Counted from the first letter of the stretch, positions 54,001-64,000 are shown. The stretch: DNA of 64,000 nucleotides from Ascidiella aspersa (GCA_963924565.1 OZ004607.1:4712001-4776000), one strand, 5' to 3'. Notes: generated by a model not told the origin, from the sequence alone. Made by a program: numbers and translations.

Positions 54001-55064
54001 TTAACCCAAGTAGCAACACATACAATGAAACGTGAAAACGCGCGAAACGGTTTCAAATACTCGACGAACGTTGCCAGTATCCGTAGCGCACAACAAATCA
54101 GCAACGATGTCCATTCGGCTGTCCTGGCTTTTCTGCCCTTCAAACTGTTCACGAACGTATTCCGACGCTTCATTGTACTCGTCCTCTCCTTCGTACTCCG
54201 GGAAGCAGATCTTCAGCGGCGATTTGGTGATCTTCTTTCGGAAGATGTCCTTTTTGTTTAAGAAGAGGACAATCCGTGACGAGCGAAATTGAGGCTCGTT
54301 GCAGATCGTCTCAAAGAGCTTGAGGCTTTCTCGCATCTTGTTCGTCTCTTTGTCCTCGGCAATAAACTGATCATAGCTGGAAAGATCAACGAAAAAGAAT
54401 ATGACCGCTTCCTCAAAGTAATGAATCCACTTCCTTTTCTCGGTTCGCTGTTCTCCGACGTCGATCATTCGGACTTTAACTTGTTTGAAATTGAAGGCGG
54501 TCTCCATAATTCCTGTCGTCTTTACTCTTGTACGGAGCACATCCTGCTCTGTTGGGATGTACGTTGACTTGCACAACCTGTCAAGCTCATCCATGTAATA
54601 TGCGGCGGAGTCGTTAAGCTGATACTCCCGCGAGCGACTGTAGCATTCCTTTACACCTTCGTCAGCCCAAAGTAGCTTCAAAGACGCGCCAATGTCTGTT
54701 GTCAAGTCAATGTCCTCCATTTGCGATGCGGCGGCTATAATTTCCTTAGCGTCCTTTACGAGTGTGGCATCACTGAACGGAATCGAGAGCGATTCCATCG
54801 CTTTCAAGATGGCTACCATCGACTGAAGAGTATTAGAGAACACAACTTTTCTGTATGCCCACCAATCATACCCAGAGAAGCCGCCTTGATGCAGGATTTG
54901 CATCTGCTTGGCAAAAGTGCTCTTTCCCGACTCTTCAGCGCCAAGCAGGAGAAGCTGGACTTCTTGTCTTATTTCAATCTGACGTTCCTTCAGCTGCTGG
55001 TCGATGTTTCTTGACACCACCTTGGCTTTCCTTTTGATTCGAGCTTTTGAGCAAAACATCCCAT
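54001..55064 (-). CDS. Divergent intronless Galpha i/o-like copy 1 (5' frameshift: possible pseudogene or sequencing error)
   Basis: 352-aa ORF 54001..55059 with G1 GAEESGKST, G2 RVKTTG, G3 DVGEQ, G4 NKKD, G5 LCATDT and REYQLNDSA. An upstream ATG GGA TGT at 55064 is one nucleotide out of frame. Confidence 0.9.
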
Positions 55065-55515
55065 TTATGCCGTTTGTTGCTGTATAAATAACTATACAAA
55101 AACCCTTGAGGCCAATTCCTCGTTTAAAGGACTGCTTACTTTTTTAAGGAGCCCTTTCAAACCGAAAACATTACAACCAATTCAAACATATCTTAGAGAA
55201 TAAAGCACTATAAGAGCTCAACTTAACTGTCTTTAAGATAATGACTTCCGCCAAATTAAAATAGAACGAAATCGTGACAAAGGATGTAGAAGACGGAAAA
55301 AATGCGATGATCGTTTCTCGTTGACAAGAAATGCAAAATGGTTGTCACTTTATATCATTTTCGTTTTTAAGTAGTCATTCATTGCGACAGTGACGAGTTA
55401 GCTTCATGTACACTGATTAAATCAAACAAATTTTCTAAAGTTGGCCCCAAAAATCGAACGACGAACAGTGTGACGTCACAGGAGTTACTGTCGTGACGTT
55501 AGTGGGCATGTGTTT

Positions 55516-56652
55516 TTACACGAGTGGTGGCCGACACAGAAGACAGAAAATTAAGATTTCAAGATATCTCCAACTCCTATTTCCACAACAATTACATTTG
55601 AAAAATGTACCACTAATCCAATCATATACGTCTTGAGACGTGTAGCGCACGTTGGCGTCCGTCATGCACGTAAATAGAGATAGAGATAAGAAATCCTCTT
55701 CTTCTCCAGGTCTAAGTTGTTTTTCAAACTGCTCGCGAACGTACATGCGAGCCTGGCTGTACTCGTCCTCTCCTTCGTACTCCGGGAAGCAGTTCTTCAG
55801 CGGCGACTTGGTGATCTTCTCCTCGAAGAGGTCATTCTTGTTCAAGAAGAAGATCTTCAGAGTCTTGGAGAAGAATGGTTTGTTGCAGATCGACTCACAG
55901 AGCTTGAGGCTTTCTCGCATTGGATTTGTCTCTTCGTTATCGGCAAAGACGTGATCGTAAGCTGAAATATCCACAAAAAATATAATGGCAGCCACGTCCT
56001 GGAAATATTGAAGCCACTTCGTTTTATTGGATCGCTGATTTGCGACTTCAATTAGGGTAAATTCGAGGTTTTCGTATTCGAAGGTCGTTTTTATGAAGCC
56101 TGTCGTCTTAACTCTTGTATGTAAAACATCCTGCTCTGTTGGGATGTACGTTGATTCGCACAGCCTGTCAAGCTCGTCAAAGAAATAGGCGGCTGAGGCA
56201 TTTAGCTGGTACTCCCGCGAGCGACTGTAGCATTCTTTTACCCCCTTGTCAGCCCAAAGTAGCTTCAAAGAAGAACCAATGTCTGTTGTAAAGTCAATAT
56301 CGTCAATTCGGGAGGCGATGGCTTTGATTTTCTCGGCGTCATCGACTCGTTCCGCGTCACCGAAAGCGATCGAAAATGATTCCATCGCTATCAAGAGGGA
56401 AAACATAGATTGAACAGTGTTAGCGAACACAACTTGCTTGTAGTCCATTCGCTCTGATTCAGAGAAGCCGTCTTGATACAAAATCTTCATCTGTTTGGCA
56501 AAAGTGCTCTTTCCTGATCTTTCTGCGCCAAGCAGCAGAATCTTGCGTTTCTTTCCTGCCGCTATTTTGTCCAGTTTCAGCTGCTTGTCGATGAGTTTGG
56601 ATACCTTCTTGGCGTTTCTTGCCGCTCGCCATTTCGAGAAGCCACAACCCAT
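55516..56652 (-). CDS. Divergent intronless Galpha i/o-like copy 2
   Basis: 378 aa. MGCGFS N-terminus, G1 GAERSGKST, G2 RVKTTG, degenerate G3 EVANQ, G4 NKND, G5 TCMTDA, extended C-terminus. Confidence 0.93.
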   Translation of the reverse strand: MGCGFSKWRAARNAKKVSKLIDKQLKLDKIAAGKKRKILLLGAERSGKSTFAKQMKILYQDGFSESERMDYKQVVFANTVQSMFSLLIAMESFSIAFGDAERVDDAEKIKAIASRIDDIDFTTDIGSSLKLLWADKGVKECYSRSREYQLNASAAYFFDELDRLCESTYIPTEQDVLHTRVKTTGFIKTTFEYENLEFTLIEVANQRSNKTKWLQYFQDVAAIIFFVDISAYDHVFADNEETNPMRESLKLCESICNKPFFSKTLKIFFLNKNDLFEEKITKSPLKNCFPEYEGEDEYSQARMYVREQFEKQLRPGEEEDFLSLSLFTCMTDANVRYTSQDVYDWISGTFFKCNCCGNRSWRYLEILIFCLLCRPPLV

Positions 56653-57238
56653 GCTATTCGCGCAACAATAATTATTTATTGGTCAACCTGGCGATGTAAA
56701 TGAAGCGATCAAAATAAGCAACTAAAAAGGGAAATTTGAACACATCTGATTCATCTTATCTGCCTTTATTATAATCACTGGCTTCCGTTGCTGCAAAGCC
56801 GCCTCAAATCGTGACTGCGGATGCACCAGCTTTCTTTCATGATACCGTGAGCATGATTCACAACACTTACTAGCATGTAATGGAGCCACCAGTATGCAAT
56901 GCGAAAATTAAAGTTCATTGTTTGGCGACCGTACCAACAAGCATGATGAATTCACAACACTAACGCTCTACGAGTATGCATGACAGGCGTATATTGCACA
57001 CTTTGTACGAATATGTTGCCTTATTGGTAGGCGGAATTAAACCAATAAATAAGCGATTTGACCTCGTAGCAGTGGTGAAACTTTGGTCATTTTTTCGCTG
57101 TTTTTAAAAAAAGAGAAGTACAAGGCAGAAATGTGGGATGAGCGTTTCTCGTAGACCAGAATGCAAAATATCGTTTTCGTTTTTTAACAGACATTTATTG
57201 CGACAGTGTACGAGTTAACTGCATGTAAATATATAAGC

Positions 57239-57620
57239 CAGGCGTTTTTCAACTTTATTTATCGCGGATTCCTAAAGTGTTTTTTTTTTGCTTCGCGTGG
57301 AGTACGATAGTAAAGAAATTTTCAAAACTGACGTCACAAATTAACGTCACAATCAAATAGACTTCAGAAATAAGTATATTTTTTTCAATAAATTTACAAA
57401 ACAATAAAAATACACTTTCAGAAATATGCTAACAATGTAAGTAAAATGGTGTCTAAATACATTCAATGCTAAATCGTTTTATTTTTAATTTAAGACTTTT
57501 CTTTGAAAAATTGACAACTTCTTAAATATGTACTAATATTTCAATGTTACCTTAATGGGCCCCCTAAACTTACTTCGCGGACCCCAAAGGGGCCAATCGA
57601 CCCCAGTTTAAGAACCCCTG
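57239..57620. mobile_element. hAT-type MITE, TSD ATATAAGC
   Basis: Imperfect TIRs CAGGCGTTTTTCAAC...GTTTAAGAACCCCTG, with a perfect 8-bp TSD at 57231-57238 and 57621-57628. Confidence 0.9.
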
Positions 57621-57738
57621 ATATAAGCTGATAGAATTAAACAAATTTTCAAAAGTTGGTCGTAATAATCGTACGAAGAACACTGTGACGTCACAGAAGG
57701 TTTTTGTGGTGACGCTACAGTGGCGATATAATTGATAT

Positions 57739-58815
57739 TCAAGAAACCTCGATACAAACACATCTGGGAAAGTTACCACTAATCAAATCAGACACGATGT
57801 CGGATACGAAGCGCACGTTGCCGGTGTCCGTTGCGCAAGTGAAGTGAGTGTAGATCTCCTTCTGGTCGCCGTGCTTGTTCTGGTTTTCGAACTGCTCGCG
57901 AACGTAATCCGACGCCTGGTTGTACTCGTCATCTCCTTCGTACTCCGGAAAGCAGATCTTCAGCGGCGACTTGGTGATCTTCTCCTCGAAGAGGTCCTTC
58001 TTGTTCAAGAAGAGGATCATCGAGGTCTTGGAGAAGAAGGTATTGTTGCAGATCGACTCGAAGAGCTTGAGACTTTCCCGCATCCTGTTCGTCTCCTCGT
58101 CTTCAGCAAGAACCTGATCGTAAGCAGAAAGACCGACGCAGAATATGATGGCGGTCACATCCTGGAAGCAATGGATCCACTTCTTTTTCTCGGATCGCTG
58201 ACCACCGACGTCGATCAGAGTAAAGTTGTGGTTCTTGTAATCGAAGGTTGTCTCGACAATTCCTGTCGTCTTTACTCTTGTACGTAAAACATCCTGCTCT
58301 GTTGGGATGTACGTTGACTCGCACAGCCTGTCAAGCTCATCCATGTAATAGGCGGCGGAGTCGTTGAGCAGATACTCCCGCGAGCGACTGCAGCACTCTT
58401 TTACGCCTTCGTCAGCCCAGAGTAGCTTCAAAGACGCGCCAATGTCTCTTGTCAAGTCGATATCTTTGATTTGCGATGCGGCGGCTCTGATTTTCTTGCC
58501 ATCGTCAACACGATCCGGTTCACCGAACTGAATCGAGAGCGATTCCATCGCTTTCAAGATAGACAACATAGATTGAACAGTGTTAGCGAACACAACTTGC
58601 TTGTAGTCCATTCGCTCTGACTCTGTGAAGCCGCCTTGATACAAAATCTTCATCTGTTTGGCAAAAGTGCTCTTTCCCGATCCTTCTGAGCCAAGCACAA
58701 TAATCTTGAGTTTCTTTCTCGCCGCTATTTCATCAAGTTTCAGCTGCTTGTCGATAAGTTTGGATACCTTCTTGGCGTTTCTTGCCGCTCGCCGTTTCGA
58801 GAAGCCAGAACCCAT
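57739..58815 (-). CDS. Intronless Galpha i/o-like copy 3
   Basis: 358 aa. G1 GSEGSGKST, RTRVKTTGIVET, DVGGQRSEKKKWIHCF, NKKD, YTHFTCATDT: clear Gi/o-family signatures. Confidence 0.95.
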   Translation of the reverse strand: MGSGFSKRRAARNAKKVSKLIDKQLKLDEIAARKKLKIIVLGSEGSGKSTFAKQMKILYQGGFTESERMDYKQVVFANTVQSMLSILKAMESLSIQFGEPDRVDDGKKIRAAASQIKDIDLTRDIGASLKLLWADEGVKECCSRSREYLLNDSAAYYMDELDRLCESTYIPTEQDVLRTRVKTTGIVETTFDYKNHNFTLIDVGGQRSEKKKWIHCFQDVTAIIFCVGLSAYDQVLAEDEETNRMRESLKLFESICNNTFFSKTSMILFLNKKDLFEEKITKSPLKICFPEYEGDDEYNQASDYVREQFENQNKHGDQKEIYTHFTCATDTGNVRFVSDIVSDLISGNFPRCVCIEVS

Positions 58816-59414
58816 GCTATTCGCGCAACAATAGTTATTTATGGGTCAACTTGACGCTGTAAATGAAGCGATCAAAATGAGCAACTAAAAGGGAAAATTG
58901 CACACATCTGATACATTATCTGCCTTTATGATCACTGGCTTCCTTTGCTGCAAAGCCGCCTGAAATCGTGACTGCGGATGCACCAGCTTTCTTTCATGAC
59001 TCCGTGAGCATGATTTACAACACTTATTAGCAGGTAACGGAGCCACCAGTATGCAATGCGAAAATTAAAGTTCATTGTTTGGCGACCGTACCAACAAGCA
59101 TGATGAATTCACAACACTAACGCTCTACGAGTATGCATGACAGGCGTATATTGCACACTTTGTACGAACATGTTGCCTTATTGGTAGGCGGAATTAAACC
59201 AAGCCAATAAATAAGCGATTTGACCTGGTAGCAGTGGTGAAACTTTGGTCATTTTTTCGCTGTTTTTAAAACAAGAGAGGTACAAGGCAGAAATGTGCGA
59301 TGAGCGTTTCTGTTGACCAGAAATGCAAAATGGTTTACAGTTCATATCGTTTTCGTTTTTTAACAGACATTTATTGCGACAGTGTACGAGTTAACTGCAT
59401 GTAAATATATAAGC

Positions 59415-59794
59415 CAGGCGTTTTTCAACTTTTTTTATCGCGGATTCCTAAAGTGTTTTTTTTGCTTCGCGTGGAGTACGATAGTAAATAAATTTTCAAA
59501 ACTGACGTCATAAATTAACGTCACAATCAAATAGACTTCAGAAATAGATAGATTGTTTTCCATAAATTTACATAACAATACAAATAGACTTTCAGAAATA
59601 TGCTAATAATTTAAGTAAAATGGTGTCTAAATACATTCAATGCTAAACCGTTTTATTTTTAATTTAAGACTTTTCTTTGAAAAATGGACAACTTCTTAAA
59701 TATGTACTAATATTTCAATGTTGCCTTAATGGGCCCCCTAAACTTACTTCGCGGACCCAAAAGGGGCCAATCGACCCCAGTTTAAGAATCCCTG
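59415..59794. mobile_element. Duplicated copy of the same hAT-type MITE insertion
   Basis: Same TIRs and the same TSD ATATAAGC (59407-59414 and 59795-59802). Confidence 0.9.
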
Positions 59795-59940
59795 ATATAA
59801 GCTGATAGAATTAAACAAATTTTCAAAAGTTGGCCGTAACAATCGAACGAAGAACACTGTGACGTCACAAAAGGTTTTTGTGGTGACGCCATAGTGGCGA
59901 TATTATTGATATTCAAGAAACCTAAATCGTTTTTATAAAA

Positions 59941-61014
59941 TCAGAATAAACAACATCCATATCCGCGAAAATTACCAACAATCAAATCAGACACGGCGTC
60001 GAATACGAAGCACACGTTGCCGGTGTCCGTTGCGCAAGTGAAGTGAGTGTAGATCCCCTTCTGGTTGCCGTGCTTGTTCTGGTCCTCGAACTGCTCGCGA
60101 ACGTAAGCCGACGCCTGGTTGTACTCGTCATCTCCTTCGTACTCCGGAAAGCAGATCTTCAGCGGCGACTTTGTGATCTTCTCCTCGAAGAGGTCATTCT
60201 TGTTCAAGAAGAGGATCATCGAGGTCTTGGAGAAGAAGGGATTGTTGCAGATCGACTCGAAGAGCTTGAGACTTTCCCGCATCCTGTTCATCTCCTCGTC
60301 TTCAGCAAGAACCTGATCGTAAGCGGAGAGGCCGACGCAGAATATAATGGCGGTCACATCCTCGAAGCAATGGATCCACTTATTTTGCTCGGATCGCTGA
60401 CCTCCGACGTCAATCAACGTAAAATTGAGGTTCTTGTAATCGAAGGTTGTCTCGATAATTCCTGTCGTCATTACTCTTGCACGTAAAACATCCTGCTCTG
60501 TTGGGATGTACGTTGACTCGCACAACCTGTCAAGCTCATCCATGTAATAGGCGGCGGAGTCGTTGAGCTGATACTCCCGCGAGCGACTGTAGCATTCTTT
60601 TACGCCTTCGTCAGCCCAGAGTAGCTTCAAAGACGCGCCAATGTCTGTTGTCAAGTCGATATCTTTGATTTGCGATGCGGCAGCTCTAATTTTCTTGCCA
60701 TCGTCAACACGATCCGGTTCACCGAACTGAATCGAGAGCGATTCCATCGCTTTCAAGATGGAAAACATAGATTGAATAATGTTAGCGAACACAACTTGCC
60801 TGAAGTCCATTCGCTCTGACTCTGTGAAGCCGCCTTGATACAAAATCTTCATCTGTTTGACAAAAGTGCTCTTTCCTGATCTTTCAGAGCCAAGCAGCAG
60901 AATCTTGCGTTTCTTTCTCTCCGCTATTTCATCCATTTGCAGCTGCTTGTCGATGAGTTTGGATAATATCTTGGCGTTTCTTGCCGCTCGCCGTTTCGAG
61001 AGGGCAGAACCCAT
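59941..61014 (-). CDS. Intronless Galpha i/o-like copy 4
   Basis: 357 aa. G1 GSERSGKST, RARVMTTG, DVGGQRSEQNKWIHCFEDVTAIIFCV, NKND, TCATDT. C-terminus NFRGYGCCLF (compare Galphao NLRGCGLY and Galphai NLKDCGLF). Confidence 0.95.
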   Translation of the reverse strand: MGSALSKRRAARNAKILSKLIDKQLQMDEIAERKKRKILLLGSERSGKSTFVKQMKILYQGGFTESERMDFRQVVFANIIQSMFSILKAMESLSIQFGEPDRVDDGKKIRAAASQIKDIDLTTDIGASLKLLWADEGVKECYSRSREYQLNDSAAYYMDELDRLCESTYIPTEQDVLRARVMTTGIIETTFDYKNLNFTLIDVGGQRSEQNKWIHCFEDVTAIIFCVGLSAYDQVLAEDEEMNRMRESLKLFESICNNPFFSKTSMILFLNKNDLFEEKITKSPLKICFPEYEGDDEYNQASAYVREQFEDQNKHGNQKGIYTHFTCATDTGNVCFVFDAVSDLIVGNFRGYGCCLF

Positions 61015-62855
61015 GCTATTGGCGCAACAATAGTTATTTATGGGTCAACTTGACGCTGTAAACAAAGCAATCAAAATGAGCAACTAAATGGGAAAATTGC
61101 ACACATCTGATACATTATCTGCCTTTATGATCACTGGCTTCTTTTGCTGCGAAACCGCCTGAAATCGTGAGTGCGGATGCACCAGCTTTCTTTTATGATT
61201 CCGTGCGCATGATTTACAACACTTACTAGCATGTAACGGAGCCACCAGTATGCAATGCGAAAATTAAAGTTCATTGTTTGGCGACCGTACCAACAAGTAT
61301 CATGAATTCACAACACTAACGCTCTACGAGTATGCATGACAGGCGTATATTGCACACTTTGTACGAACATGTTGCCTTATTGGTAGGCGGAATTAAACCA
61401 ATAAATAAGCGATTTGACCTGGTAGCAGTGGTGAAACTTTGGCTATTTTTCTGTTTAAAAAAACTAACACGGCGCATTGTTACGGTGACAATGTCCTTAT
61501 TATCATAGTGTGATAAATACCGAATAAAACTCGAAGAACCTCAAGTTTACATGACAGCGTCGAACAGTTTGTAGGATTGGTATATAGTTGGCATACAAAT
61601 TTATGTATAACTTCTATTTGGGAGTTAGGTTAGGTGGAAAACGCCGAAGATATTACTGCAGTGGTAAATTACAGGTGGCTAAGTCTGATGAAACATTGGT
61701 GGGCGCTTAGAAACACAAAACCAAGCTATAAGGCGCTTGAGGTTACGCAACAACGCCCAACAAGGCTTCAAATAGGTAACGGCGTCGTCTATTTCCGATG
61801 GCATGTGGATTAAGTGTAGAGCTTCTTTTGCTCTTTATTTGCATTCTCGAATCGGTTCTAGATGTTGGCCGACGCCTCTTTGACCGTGATTTCGCCCTGG
61901 TATAGCGAAAAGTAGGCCCTTGGTGGCGACTTGGTGCTATTGTCATCAAGACAATTCTCTTGTACGGCAAGAGATGTGGTAAGAACCTGTCCTACTTAAA
62001 AAGACAAGCGCAGAAGAAAATTGCAATATGAAATTCACATTCTGGAAGCAAAGCACCCCCCTATTTTTTACGATCTCGCACCTCGAAACTTGATCAACGC
62101 AAAGTTGAGGTTTTTGTCATCATAAATGCCATCCATAATTGATGTGGTATATTACATTCTTGCACGAAGGGCCTCCCGATCGGTTGGCATCCAGCTCGTC
62201 AAAAAAAAGCAAACGGTGACTAGCTGTATGTCCTGGTATATTTCGTGTATTGATGTACATTTACTCCAAATCGAGCTGACATTAATGCAATCATCAAACA
62301 CTCATACTAACGCGAGTTATACTAAGGCTTTTTCTTTTATAGCGCCACAATAGCTGACTGTAAATAGACAAGTTGATGTTGTCAAGAAAAACTAGAATGT
62401 CGAACAGTTATACAAGGAAATTGTTGTGTAGCGGCCGGACGCGATTTTCACGTGGGCGATGACCACGCTTACACAGTAGCCAGAATGATTGATGTTCAAA
62501 AAATATAGATTCTTTGTAAGGAACGTTAATTAATTCACTGCGTCGATGGGACACACACAATAGGGCCGTCAGTACAGCAATGTACCATGGCTCCATTGTA
62601 TAATCATACAGTAAACAATAAAACTCCAGGCTTAAAAAACAGAGTTAAATCAGGATCAGACATTTTTTTAAAAGGAATGTATATTTCGCCCATACTTGAA
62701 TCGTCAATTTCTTGATTCTAATGAATCCCCATACAACAAAGAGCAACAGATGAACCTCAAAAACGACAATTACAAAAACAAAAAAAGAAGAAAAGTTTTT
62801 TTTCGCGTATGTTATTTAGGAACAAACCTGGTTTTACCAAAGCTACCACTTAAAC

Positions 62856-63971
62856 CAGGGTTACCATCTGCTCAGACCAAAAAATAAGCACGCTACTAAA
62901 GACCAGGGGCAGATCCAGGATTCCGGGGGTGACATCCAAGCTTTCAAGGAATAACGTTATGAAATAAAATAAAAACTTGAAAAACAGCTATTTAGGAATG
63001 CGCAAAACGTGGCTTAATCGCGCGAAGCGCGAAAAAAAGCGTTTATTTGATTGAAATTGGCAAGTTAATCATTCTTATTTAATGCAACCTTTGTCAACTT
63101 TTTTGCGTCGGAGCACACCTGTACAGCGCGCGTACAAGTTTTTAAAACAGGGATCGGCAACCTTTTTCTAGTCGCGGGCCAAACCAAACTCAGTAAGTTC
63201 TCCACTGTCCAGCTTGTAAAACAGGCCGCGGGCCGGATGACTTTCTCTGGCGGACCGGGTCCGGGCTGCCGTAGGTTGCCGAGCCCTGTTTTAAACCGTG
63301 GTGCATGGCAGTAAGAAACGCCTGGAGCTGACCCTGTATGGTAGTTAAGTTTAGTTCACTTGGCGGAGTTTGGCTTGTAATAAAATTGTTTATAGAATAA
63401 TTTACTGTAATGCTTCAAGCAATTTTTTTGTAGTAACATTGTTTTTTCCATAGACACTGGGCTGATTTCACAATCACAATAACAGCAATGATCGTAGCTC
63501 TTTTGCTTTCGCCTTTGTTTGACATTAGCATTGGAAAATGCATTTTCACGTTTATCACAAAAACGTGCTTTATGCAGACTCATTCTCTCAAAAACATTTT
63601 GTCTGTACTGACACAAATGACTGCCGACAGTTTACTTGATTGCTAAAGCAAGCTATCCCACTTATATAGGCTACAATTTACTTTTTAGATTTAGAATAAA
63701 CAATCACAATCCATTGCTATTATGCAAATTAATGCATTGTTGTTATAATCTGAGTTAAAGAACTAGGTAAATATAAATAAATGAAGTCTCTCACTCTGAC
63801 GTCGATGATAAAAGAATTGATAAAGAACGCTTTTAAAAACTAAAATAAGACAAACTAAGCACACAACTCTCAAATAAGCACGTTTCTTAGAAATAAGCAC
63901 ATTTGTGTTATCTAAGACTGAACCCAAAAATAAGCACAAATCTTAAAAATAAGCACGGTATGGTAACCCTA
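62856..63971. mobile_element. Non-autonomous hAT-like element, TSD ACTTAAAC, with a nested MITE
   Basis: TIRs CAGGGTTACCAT...ATGGTAACCCTA, perfect 8-bp TSD at 62848-62855 and 63972-63979, subterminal AATAAGCAC repeats at both ends. Confidence 0.88.
63148..63288. mobile_element. Small hAT-type MITE nested in the 62856-63971 element
   Basis: TIRs CAGGGATCGGCAACCT...AGGTTGCCGAGCCCTG, TSD TTTTAAAA/TTTTAAAC. Confidence 0.85.
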
Positions 63972-64000
63972 ACTTAAACGGACAGTAGTCGGATACGGCG

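What the first reader, a model, noticed from the sequence alone, without database searches (positions are those of the whole stretch)
54001..61014. Tandem family of intronless Galpha i/o genes sharing a P-loop Gly-to-Glu change: candidate atypical G-protein system
Seen: the canonical GAGESGKST motif reads GAEE, GAER, GSEG and GSER in the four copies. All four have Glu (GAA) at the Galphai1 G42 position, and three also lost E43. The catalytic Arg, switch-I Thr and switch-II Gln are kept in every copy, and the ORFs are long and open. Established: G42 corresponds to Ras G12; bulky residues there (G42V, G42R in Galphai1) disturb hydrolysis, the transition state and RGS binding, and E43 forms a salt bridge with R178 over the nucleotide. 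Inference: a retroposed Gi/o copy was fixed with altered switch behaviour (GTPase-slow, RGS-insensitive or self-activating) and then expanded as a lineage-specific signalling module.
Basis: partly seen in the sequence, partly recalled or inferred. Interest (0 to 1): 0.82.

Follow-up and report, generated by a model that had tools for sequence, protein, structure and literature searches.

The report
Divergent G-alpha paralogue array with Glu-42
An ascidian genome carries a tandem array of five fast-evolving, intronless copies of a tunicate-specific Gi-like G-protein alpha gene that all replace the key P-loop glycine with glutamate and have lost the receptor-coupling tail. They have been kept by selection, but are barely transcribed in the one RNA sample available and remain untested biochemically.

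Summary
Four minus-strand ORFs (352-378 aa) are full-length G-alpha proteins with P-loops GAEE/GAER/GSEG/GSER-SGKST, and Glu (GAA) sits at the Galphai1 Gly42 position in each.

- The array continues past the window. There is a fifth Glu42 copy, and then the canonical, equally intronless parent gene (GAGESGKST), an orthologue of the ascidian-specific Gi-like class (Halocynthia Q9NL97, Ciona H2Y1Q1).
- So intronlessness is inherited, not tied to the P-loop change.
- The copies are mosaics made by gene conversion. c3 and c4 have a derived 5' end and tail around a parent-like middle.
- c1, c2 and c5 have also lost the switch II DxxG glycine. All five have replaced the last ~11 residues of helix alpha5, and c1-c4 carry a Cys cluster there.
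- c1 has a 1-nt deletion that puts its ancestral MGC start out of frame.

Pairwise dN/dS is 0.24-0.32, and 0.04-0.15 in one block, with dS up to 1-2, so these are not long-dead pseudogenes.

RNA support is weak. Only c2, plus about 2 reads in a private 3'UTR, has copy-specific reads.

The best reading is nucleotide-binding G-alpha derivatives that do not switch normally and are uncoupled from receptors. This is inferred, not shown. It is a new variant of a known kind, of moderate interest.

The parts
54001..55064 (-). c1: the most diverged copy (352-aa ORF from the internal ATG at 55059). P-loop GAEESGKST, with the Glu42 codon GAA at 54934-54936. Switch II reads DVGEQRTE (Gly203->Glu). The tail is ...FTFHCMCCYLG. 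The ancestral ATG at 55062-55064 (MGC...) is out of frame and ends after 24 codons.
55516..56652 (-). c2: 378 aa, N-terminus MGCGFSK (Gly2 and Cys3 kept). P-loop GAERSGKST (GAA at 56521-56523). Switch II reads EVANQRSN (Asp200Glu, Gly202Ala, Gly203Asn). TCAT has become TCMT. The tail is long and Cys-rich. This is the only copy with clearly copy-specific, strand-consistent RNA reads.
57739..58815 (-). c3: 358 aa, P-loop GSEGSGKST (GAA at 58684-58686). It is a mosaic. Codons 1-75 are c2-like. Codons 76-345 are parent-like, with canonical DVGGQRSE. The tail (...GNFPRCVCIEVS) is again of the derived type.
59941..61014 (-). c4: 357 aa, P-loop GSERSGKST (GAA at 60883-60885). It has the same mosaic structure as c3. 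Switch I has Lys180Met, and NKKD reads NKND in the reference. The tail ends ...GYGCCLF.
63943..64000 (-). 3' end of c5, the fifth derived copy. The full ORF is window-equivalent 63943-65013 = L005:1459-2529(-), 356 aa. P-loop GAEGSGKST. Switch I reads LCVKVKTTGS (Arg178Lys). Switch II reads EIAEQ-SNITKW.
56653..57752 (-). Upstream flank of c2. It belongs to the 2.2-kb tandem unit shared with c3 (58816-59915, 93% identical over 1.1 kb) and c4 (61015-61474, 91-94% identical). It has no similarity to the parent's upstream region. A few sense-orientation RNA reads fall at 56693-56891.

Best explanation
The locus is a tandem array on the minus strand. At its head, outside the window, is the canonical, intronless ascidian-specific Gi-like G-alpha gene ('Gn-type'). 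Five derived paralogues follow it.

The founder duplicate gained a new 5' flank. It also acquired Gly42->Glu and Ile49->Phe in the P-loop/alpha1 element, and replaced the last ~11 residues of helix alpha5 with unrelated sequence, which carries a Cys cluster in c1-c4. The unit was then amplified, and the copies have since exchanged segments with each other and with the parent by gene conversion.

Selection has kept the copies as proteins. They retain the residues that hold guanine nucleotide: GxxxxGKS/T, NKxD, Thr181 and Ser47. They have lost or remodelled the parts that make a G-alpha a receptor-driven, self-terminating switch:
- Gly42 in all five copies;
- Glu43 in four;
- the DxxG glycine and Asp200 in the older copies (Gly203 in c1, c2 and c5; Asp200 in c2 and c5);
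- switch III and Arg208/Lys209;
- the alpha5 tail in all five.

Inferred mechanism: these are membrane-tethered proteins (Gly2 is kept in c2-c5) that bind nucleotide but cannot be activated by GPCRs in the usual way. They either hydrolyse GTP poorly and ignore RGS proteins (as G42V and Gz do) or cannot reach the active conformation at all (as G42R does). They would then act as constitutive or buffering components rather than as canonical transducers. c1 appears recently disabled by a start-proximal frameshift.

Shown here: the anatomy, the descent, the mosaicism and the purifying selection. Inferred only: every biochemical property.
For: Identity and class: Pfam G-alpha E 1e-104 to 1e-131, best PDB match Galphai1. 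In the ML tree the copies sit inside the ascidian Gn clade (100% support) and are monophyletic (96-99%). Their branches are 0.22-0.48 long, against 0.014 for the parent.

Parent and fifth copy.

Shared changes: only G42E and I49F are changed identically in all five copies. E43, R208 and K209 are changed in four or five. The Glu codon is GAA in all, against GGC in the parent.

Motif losses: 39-47 of 167 positions invariant across Gn and Gi are changed in c1, c2 and c5. These include G203, D200, L234, E236, D237 and R242. L234 and E236 are the residues that clash with a long side chain at position 42, and R242 contacts it, in Galphai1(G42R) (PMC3285607).

Mosaicism: c3 and c4 are 84-96% identical to c2 and 64-80% to the parent over codons 1-75. 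The pattern reverses over codons 76-345, and the trees are incongruent accordingly.

Selection: pairwise dN/dS is 0.24-0.32, with bootstrap upper bounds <=0.44. Codons 126-175 give 0.04-0.15 with dS 0.2-0.58. The parent-like tract of c3 and c4 gives 0.00-0.24, against ~0.5 expected if the copy lineage were neutral. A neutral simulation gives P(ORF still open) of 2.5e-4 at 0.2 substitutions per site.

Tails: they are unrelated to the parent's 3' end in any frame. c1-c4 share an F-x-C-x-C(C) pattern.

Fold: an AF2 model of c2 has pLDDT 81.7 with the G-alpha topology. The tail 355-378 is below 50.

RNA: about 4-5 copy-specific reads on c2 and its 5' flank, all in the orientation expected for a minus-strand RNA.

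No closer relative: the best database hits to c2's N-terminal or Ras-domain parts are canonical Gn proteins at <=65% identity.
Against: Expression is barely detectable. About 15 reads fell on coding sequence in 6% of one RNA run of unknown tissue. Those on c3 and c4 lie only in tracts 96-99% identical to the parent and carry parent-state letters, so most are probably parental transcripts.

Constraint is relaxed compared with the parent. Between c3 and c4 the ratio is 0.50 overall, ~1 in the N-terminal 75 codons and ~2 in codons 301-345 (few sites).

c1 has lost its ancestral reading-frame start. A low-depth contig from another sample shows a premature stop in a c3-like copy.

Gene conversion from a functional parent can keep ORFs open and blur age estimates.

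No biochemical property was or could be tested. The consequence of Glu at position 42 cannot be predicted, because the G42V and G42R precedents differ.
Confidence: 0.6

Rival explanations
1. The derived copies are non-functional duplicates in decay. Their open frames are maintained only passively, by youth and by repeated gene conversion from the functional parent. The Glu42 change is a neutral marker that was copied along.
For: - The protein branches are very long and 15-47 of 167 otherwise invariant positions are hit.
- c1 has a frameshifted start.
- A c3-like copy may carry a null allele in another sample.
- Copy-specific RNA is almost absent.
- Between c3 and c4 omega is ~1 at the N-terminus and ~2 in codons 301-345.
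- The c3/c4 split is young enough (dS 0.10) that an open frame is uninformative, with P about 0.13 per copy.
Against: - c1, c2 and c5 differ from each other at dS 0.6-2 in unconverted tracts, yet keep full-length frames. The neutral expectation is below 1e-3 per copy before counting indels.
- dN/dS among purely derived pairs is 0.3, with upper bounds <=0.44.
- Codons 126-175 accumulate synonymous differences (dS up to 0.58) with almost no amino-acid change. Conversion cannot mimic that.
- The nucleotide-holding residues and Gly2 are selectively retained, while the switch residues are not.
Confidence: 0.2
2. They are still receptor-coupled transducers: a Gz-like 'slow' subclass that signals through GPCRs with prolonged GTP-bound lifetimes. 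This would apply especially to c3 and c4, which keep the parent's switch I-III.
For: - Gz naturally has GTSNSGKST at the same two P-loop positions (P0076). By established knowledge it is a very slow GTPase that still couples to receptors.
- c3 and c4 keep Arg178, Thr181, DVGGQ, TCAT and the NKxD core residues Asn269, Lys270 and Asp272; c4's box reads NKND because of K271N.
- Gly2, the myristoylation site, is kept.
Against: - The last ~11 residues of alpha5, the main receptor-selectivity determinant (established knowledge), are replaced in every copy by unrelated Gly/Pro/Cys-containing sequence. In c2 this tail is modelled with pLDDT below 50.
- Ile49, at the alpha1/alpha5 relay, is Phe in all five copies.
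- c1, c2 and c5 lack the DxxG glycine needed for the GTP-driven switch.
Confidence: 0.12
3. The Glu42 copies act chiefly as sinks for Gbetagamma or GoLoco proteins. They would be dominant-negative-like regulators of the parental Gn pathway.
For: [quoted passage not shown]
- By established knowledge, Gly203 or Gly226 mutants fail to release Gbetagamma.
- Trp211 and Phe215 are kept in all copies.
Against: - Several Gbeta-contact residues are changed in c2 and c5: Ile184, Glu186 (c2 only), Lys209, Ile212 and Cys214.
- The N-terminal helix is the most diverged segment.
- No binding test was run.
Confidence: 0.08

Closest known systems
Ascidian-specific Gi-like G-alpha class ('Gn-type'). Members are Halocynthia roretzi Q9NL97, Ciona intestinalis H2Y1Q1, the Phallusia mammillata 'G(I) alpha-like' protein, and the 'Other' group of Prasobh & Manoj 2009 (PMC2752167).
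   Same: The derived copies nest inside this clade with 100% support. They lie next to this genome's orthologue, which is 90.8% identical to the Phallusia protein. All are single-ORF genes in this genome. Tandem duplication of this class is on record in Ciona, as a pair 3.5 kb apart.
   Different: All 16 orthologues aligned have GAGESGKST and DVGGQRSERKKW. Their C-termini end ...VLMRKILDTVFGSG or a close variant. The derived copies have Glu42 and Phe49, altered Glu43, Arg208 and Lys209, and an unrelated tail.
Galpha-z (GNAZ)
   Same: It is a natural Gi-family member whose P-loop is substituted at the same two positions: GTSNSGKST, i.e. Gly42Ser and Glu43Asn (P0076). By established knowledge it is a very slow GTPase.
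   Different: Gz keeps a Gi-type alpha5 C-terminus (...NNLKYIGLC) and canonical switch II, and it couples to GPCRs. It has Ser rather than an acidic residue at position 42. It is an independent vertebrate lineage.
Engineered or pathogenic Gly42 mutants: Galphai1 G42V and G42R, and fungal MagA/MagB G42R (Bosch et al. 2012, PMC3285607)
   Same: They change the same residue. They show that a side chain there disturbs Gln204 positioning (G42V, GTPase-deficient). Alternatively it blocks the active switch conformation and RGS binding while hydrolysis stays normal (G42R).
   Different: Those are single substitutions in an otherwise wild-type protein. Here Glu42 is fixed in a gene family together with changes in switch II/III, Glu43 and the C-terminus. 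No data on a Glu at this position in a G-alpha were found in the paper library.
Divergent Gn paralogues in other ascidian assemblies: P0045 and P0073 (GALESGKST), P0055 and P0065 (P-loop destroyed, Arg178Pro), P0036 and P0040 (EVSGQ)
   Same: These are lineage-specific extra copies of the same class with damaged catalytic motifs. Several sit on the same contig as a canonical copy, judged by matching contig lengths.
   Different: They carry different substitutions (Leu42, or total loss of GKS). P0036, P0040 and P0041 arose independently, each sister to its own species' canonical copy; the others were not put in the tree. None has Glu42 or the Cys-rich tail.
Lineage-specific or atypical G-alpha families: the C. 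elegans gpa genes, plant XLG proteins, and pseudoGTPases in general
   Same: They show the same pattern: a canonical G-alpha plus a clade-restricted expansion of fast-evolving relatives, some with impaired GTPase motifs. PMC2752167 notes 16 nematode-specific genes, and PMC8584482 reviews atypical plant G-alpha. That gpa genes are expressed in a few sensory cells is from established knowledge, not from those papers.
   Different: There is no common descent with these families. The resemblance is one of evolutionary mode only.

Membership tests
G-protein alpha subunit (Pfam PF00503) | Full-length match to the family profile (Ras-like plus helical domain) | tested here: met
   E from 3e-104 to 2e-131 over profile positions 1-333 in all four copies. 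The AF2 model of c2 has G-alpha topology, pLDDT 81.7.
G-protein alpha subunit (functional GTPase switch) | Intact G1 (GAGESGKST), G2 (RxxT), G3 (DVGGQ), G4 (NKxD) and G5 (TCAT) boxes | tested here: not met
   - G1: Gly42Glu in all copies, and Glu43 lost in four.
- G3: intact only in c3 and c4.
- G2: Arg178Lys in c5.
- G5: altered in c1, c2 and c5.
- G4: the core Asn, Lys and Asp are kept in all copies.

Gi/o class | Closest to Gi/o among the classes | tested here: met
   The best PDB hits are all Galphai1, i2 or i3. The tree roots the Gn clade next to canonical Gi.
Gi/o class | C-terminal ...C-G-L-F/Y, with the pertussis-toxin Cys at position -4 | tested here: not met
   The parent ends ...DTVFGSG. 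The derived tails are unrelated to it. Only c4 ends C-C-L-F, which is a resemblance rather than homology.
Ascidian Gn-type class | Membership of the clade containing Halocynthia Q9NL97 and Ciona H2Y1Q1 | tested here: met
   100% bootstrap support for the clade, with the derived copies inside it.
Ascidian Gn-type class | Class-specific C-terminus VLMRKI(L/I)D(T/N)VFGSG | tested here: not met
   It is present in the parent and, with small variations, in the orthologues. It is absent from all five derived copies.
Processed retrogene | Intronless copy of an intron-containing parent, with poly(A) or target-site duplication remnants | tested here: not met
   The immediate parent is itself a single ORF. 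The copies share 0.5-1.1 kb of non-coding flanks as a 2.2-kb tandem unit. Canonical Gi/o genes in this genome match exon by exon, so an ancient retroposition at the origin of the whole class is possible but was not tested.
PseudoGTPase | Loss of nucleotide binding and/or hydrolysis shown biochemically | not testable with these tools
   The sequence predicts impaired switching: Glu42 in all copies, and loss of the DxxG glycine in c1, c2 and c5. No assay was possible.

The most novel reading that the evidence does not exclude
Evolution has fixed, and then compensated for, a 'forbidden' P-loop substitution. The copies would form a G-alpha family permanently held outside the normal GDP/GTP switch cycle. 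Glu42 would sit together with co-evolved switch II/III residues (L234, E236, D237, R242, R208, K209) and an Ile49Phe change in helix alpha1. A new Cys-rich lipid- or metal-binding tail would replace receptor coupling. The family would then be a receptor-independent membrane regulator of the parental Gn pathway, for instance a Gbetagamma or GoLoco buffer or a constitutive effector ligand. It would also be a natural model of disease-type Gly42 mutants.
Probability: 0.25. Interest if true: 0.65.

Novelty: new variant of a known kind. Interest (0 to 1): 0.42.

Why it matters
Gly42, the equivalent of Ras Gly12, is one of the most conserved residues of G-alpha proteins, and changes there are known mainly as oncogenic, pathogenic or engineered mutations. 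This is a gene family in which an acidic residue at that position has been fixed and kept under purifying selection. The switch III residues that a long side chain would clash with have changed alongside it, and the receptor-coupling tail has been lost.

That offers a natural experiment on how a G-alpha can be converted into something other than a receptor-driven timer. It also adds to evidence, from other ascidian assemblies seen here, that the tunicate-specific Gi-like class repeatedly spawns atypical paralogues.

The practical weight is limited. The family is confined to one lineage, its expression is barely detectable so far, and nothing is known of its biochemistry.

Tried and rejected
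- **Retrogene origin of the Glu42 copies:** rejected. The parent is intronless too, and the copies share non-coding flanks in a 2.2-kb unit.
- **New tails as a frameshifted reading of the parent's 3' end:** rejected. There is no match in any frame.
- **RNA evidence for c3 and c4:** I first read it as strand-specific expression. I withdrew that after finding the reads confined to tracts 96-99% identical to the parent and carrying parent-state letters.
- **pN/pS from differences in the DNA-run contigs:** abandoned. Many 'variants' are simply the states of other paralogues, so cross-mapping or conversion alleles cannot be excluded.
- **Tree-based branch models of dN/dS:** not attempted, because the copies are recombinant mosaics. 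Region-wise pairwise estimates were used instead.
- **Orthologues of the derived type in other species:** none found with the N-terminal or Ras-domain parts of c2. That search depends on shared words and on which ascidian genomes are in the database, so absence is provisional.
- **Paper searches:** nothing relevant for 'HrGn' or for 'G42E' in G proteins.
- **Complex prediction:** none was run, because no binding claim is made.

Full report
**1. What is in the sequence**

The four ORFs exist as described, all on the minus strand:

| Copy | Window coordinates | Length |
|---|---|---|
| c1 | 54001-55059 | 352 aa |
| c2 | 55516-56652 | 378 aa |
| c3 | 57739-58815 | 358 aa |
| c4 | 59941-61014 | 357 aa |

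. Each matches Pfam G-alpha end to end, with E from 3e-104 to 2e-131. The best solved relatives are Galphai1, i2 and i3 (E about 1e-131). In that alignment the c3 segment lgsegsgkst lies on lgagesgkst.

The P-loops read GAEESGKST, GAERSGKST, GSEGSGKST and GSERSGKST. The Glu codon is GAA in each, at 54934-6, 56521-3, 58684-6 and 60883-5.

**2. The window shows only part of the locus**

A six-frame search of the whole assembly (308 Mb, 75 contigs) found two more single-ORF copies just beyond the window end and one unlinked copy on contig C8.

- The first, c5, is window-equivalent 63943-65013, so only 58 nt lie inside the window. It reads GAEGSGKST. Its switch I is LCVKVKTTGS, so the catalytic Arg178 is Lys. 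Its switch II is EIAEQ-SNITKW.
- The second lies at window-equivalent 69347-70420. It is fully canonical: MGCAASK..., GAGESGKST, RTRVKTTGI, DVGGQRSERKKW, NKKD and TCAT, ending ...VLMRKILDTVFGSG.

In gene orientation the array therefore runs parent, c5, c4, c3, c2, c1.

**3. What the parent is**

Database searches with c3 returned a set of ascidian proteins at 69-79% identity:

- a Phallusia mammillata 'G(I) subunit alpha-like' protein;
- Ciona intestinalis H2Y1Q1;
- C. savignyi H2ZFG0;
- Halocynthia roretzi Q9NL97 'G protein alpha subunit';
- about 20 unnamed proteins.

All have canonical motifs, and their C-termini are ...MRKILDTVFGSG or close variants with no Cys at -4. The parent is 90.8% identical to the Phallusia protein, so the genome is an ascidian close to Phallusia.

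Prasobh & Manoj 2009 (PMC2752167) described two pairs of Ciona-specific G-alpha proteins basal to Gi/o, about 59% identical to human Galphai1. One of those pairs is a tandem duplicate 3.5 kb apart. The class, and its tendency to duplicate in tandem, are therefore on record.

From memory, the Halocynthia protein was published as a novel embryonic G-alpha ('Gn'). I could not find that paper in the library.

An ML tree puts all five derived copies inside this clade (100% support). They form a monophyletic group (96-99%) with branches of 0.22-0.48, against 0.014 for the parent.

**4. Intronlessness is not linked to the P-loop change**

The parent is a single ORF, and so is the C8 gene. The C8 gene belongs to a second ascidian class whose C-terminus is ...VLGDLGLMTE. 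Canonical Gi/o genes in this genome match exon by exon.

c2, c3 and c4 share 0.46-1.1 kb of upstream sequence and about 1 kb of downstream sequence at 91-94% identity, as a 2.2-kb tandem unit. None of the flanks resembles the parent's. The family grew by segmental duplication, not by retroposition.

**5. Mosaic structure**

Block-wise nucleotide identity shows that c3 and c4 are chimeras:

| Codons | c3 vs c2 | c3 vs parent |
|---|---|---|
| 1-75 | 84-96% | 64-80% |
| 76-345 | 59-95% | 88-99% |

After about codon 346 the tail and the 3' flank are again of the derived type. Trees from the N-terminal part and from the Ras-domain part are incongruent in exactly this way.

The simplest reading is that the parent converted the middle of the c3/c4 ancestor. 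c1 and c5 share a 92-95% identical tract at codons 76-125. Because of this mosaicism, the canonical switch regions of c3 and c4 are borrowed, and the age of the family cannot be read from whole-gene distances.

In the unconverted parts the position of the derived clade relative to Phallusia and Ciona is unresolved, and dS reaches 1-2. The family may therefore be older than the species.

**6. Derived features**

Only two residues are changed identically in all five copies relative to 17 invariant Gn sequences: Gly42Glu and Ile49Phe, both in the P-loop/alpha1 element. Glu43, Arg208 and Lys209 are changed in four or five copies.

c1, c2 and c5 differ from the parent at 39-47 of the 167 positions that are invariant across Gn and Gi. 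c3 and c4 differ at 15-16 of them. The changes in c1, c2 and c5 include:

- Gly203, the DxxG glycine, which becomes Glu, Asn and Glu in c1, c2 and c5;
- Asp200Glu in c2 and c5;
- Cys214Tyr;
- switch III Leu234, Glu236, Asp237, Glu238 and Arg242.

According to Bosch et al. 2012 (PMC3285607), Leu234 and Glu236 clash with a long side chain at position 42 in the active state, and Arg242 contacts it. That makes compensatory co-evolution a reasonable, though untested, idea.

Several residues are retained everywhere: Lys46, Ser47, Thr48, Thr181, Gln204, and Asn269, Lys270 and Asp272. Gly2 is kept in c2-c5, and Cys3 in c2 and c5.

All tails diverge from the parent after ...DAVSD and are not a frameshifted reading of it. 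c1-c4 share a Cys cluster: FHCMCC, FKCNCC, PRCVC and GYGCC. The AF2 model of c2 has the G-alpha fold (pLDDT 81.7, pTM 0.75) but an unconfident tail from residue 355.

**7. c1 is damaged**

Compared with all other copies, c1 lacks one nucleotide in codons 4-5. The ancestral ATG at 55062-55064 now gives MGCFAQK... and stops after 24 codons. The long ORF can start only at an overlapping internal ATG (MFCSK...), without Gly2. I could not check this base in reads, because the reads call had already been used.

**8. Selection**

Nei-Gojobori dN/dS over codons 1-345 is 0.24-0.32 for pairs among c1, c2 and c5 and between them and c3 or c4. Bootstrap upper bounds are at most 0.44. For c3 against c4 the ratio is 0.50 (0.29-0.89).

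By region:

- Codons 126-175 (helical domain and linker 2) give 0.04-0.15 with dS 0.2-0.58. That is real purifying selection, not homogenisation.
- Codons 176-275 give 0.13-0.35 with dS from 0.75 to above 2.
- In the parent-like tract, c3 and c4 against the parent give 0.00-0.24. About 0.5 would be expected if the copy lineage were neutral.
- Between c3 and c4, the N-terminal 75 codons (16 non-synonymous, 4 synonymous) and codons 301-345 (8 and 1) give omega of about 1-2.

A neutral simulation from the parent CDS gives P(frame still open) as follows:

| Substitutions per site | P(ORF still open) |
|---|---|
| 0.05 | 0.13 |
| 0.1 | 0.02 |
| 0.2 | 2.5e-4 |

The old copies cannot have drifted neutrally for most of their history. 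For c3 and c4 taken individually, the open frame since their split is uninformative.

**9. Expression**

Only one RNA run of the species was offered (X4), of which 6% was read, and 30 reads were laid.

- Thirteen or so belong to a repeat in the 3' flanks (57489-57622 and 59479-59798), which is read on both strands.
- About 15 lie on coding sequence. All have the first mate on +, as expected for minus-strand RNA in a dUTP library.

The reads on c3 (57688-58085) and c4 (59877-60672) fall only where these copies are 96-99% identical to the parent. They also carry the parent's letters at 57803, 57886, 60196, 60290, 60565 and 60619. Most are therefore probably parental transcripts.

Copy-specific support is limited to about 4-5 reads on c2 and its 5' flank (56096-56891, at most 90% identical to any other copy) and about 2 reads in the private 3'UTR of c4 or c3 (59890).

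Runs X1-X3 look like DNA, since they cover the intergenic sequence. They show no indel inside c2-c4, while three indels lie between genes. A 4x-deep, c3-like contig in X3 has TAG at codon 94. This may be an error or a null allele.

**10. How it probably works (inference)**

Established knowledge covers several points:

- Gly42 corresponds to Ras Gly12.
- G42V makes Galphai1 GTPase-deficient by displacing Gln204.
- G42R leaves hydrolysis intact but prevents the active conformation and RGS binding, and favours Gbetagamma and GoLoco partners (PMC3285607).
- Gz, with GTSNSGKST, is a very slow GTPase.
- The DxxG glycine senses the gamma-phosphate.
- The alpha5 C-terminus selects receptors.

On that basis the derived proteins should still hold nucleotide but should not behave as receptor-activated, RGS-terminated switches. 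Which abnormal state they adopt cannot be decided from sequence. I put 0.6 on the overall reading (selected, atypical, receptor-uncoupled G-alpha derivatives). I put 0.2 on decay without function, 0.12 on a Gz-like receptor-coupled slow class, and 0.08 on a specific Gbetagamma/GoLoco sink role.

**11. Novelty**

No protein closer than 65% to c2's N-terminal part, or 63% to its Ras-domain part, was found. None of the 150 G-alpha proteins surveyed has Glu at position 42, and none turned up in the 30 added.

Other ascidian assemblies do hold independently derived atypical paralogues of the same class:

- Leu42 in P0045 and P0073;
- a destroyed P-loop and Arg178Pro in P0055 and P0065;
- EVSGQ in P0036 and P0040.

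The phenomenon is therefore a recurring mode of evolution of a known class. This array is a new variant of it, and its interest is moderate.

**Tool note**

Noticed in passing
G000:C8:11045920-11046831 (L007:1453-2454, + strand): This is an unlinked, single-ORF G-alpha of a second ascidian-specific Gi-like class. Its C-terminus ...VLGDLGLMTE is shared with P0044, P0089, P0090 and P0102. The P-loop and switch motifs are canonical. The ORF starts MSQFAKTRALCNKSRFQGAGESGKST, so the N-terminal helix and the lipidation motif are missing or lie elsewhere.
   Followed up: partly
window 57489-57622 and 59479-59798 (3' flanks of c3 and c4): A repeat element has a sharp boundary at 57622 and at 59798. 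RNA reads on both strands and DNA contigs run from it into sequence unlike the window, and an 'opposite strands' joint links 57601 to 59779. It is probably a dispersed mobile element that is transcribed elsewhere in the genome.
   Followed up: no
proteins P0055, P0065, P0032 and P0009 (apparently one contig of 395,714 bases in another ascidian assembly, judged by matching contig length), and P0045 and P0073: Other ascidians carry paralogues of the same class with a destroyed P-loop (FGDKYETNSI, FGDEFERNVF), Arg178Pro and polybasic tails, or with Gly42Leu (GALESGKST). Loss of GTPase motifs in extra copies of this class appears to recur.
   Followed up: partly
window 59941-59955 (last codons of c4): c4 ends in Cys-Cys-Leu-Phe. 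This resembles both a CaaX prenylation box with X = Phe and the Gi terminus Cys-Gly-Leu-Phe, although the tail is not homologous to either. c1-c3 have C-x-C(C) clusters at the matching place.
   Followed up: no
window 60734 (c4 codon 94), seen in run X3 only: A 319-nt contig, 4x deep, carries c3-type residues and TCG>TAG, a premature stop. It may be an assembly error, a null allele, or an extra c3-like pseudogene in another individual.
   Followed up: partly
window 57844-58287 and 60043-60486, + strand: 147-aa antisense ORFs lie inside c3 and c4. They are conserved only because the sense genes are. Nothing suggests that they are genes.
   Followed up: no
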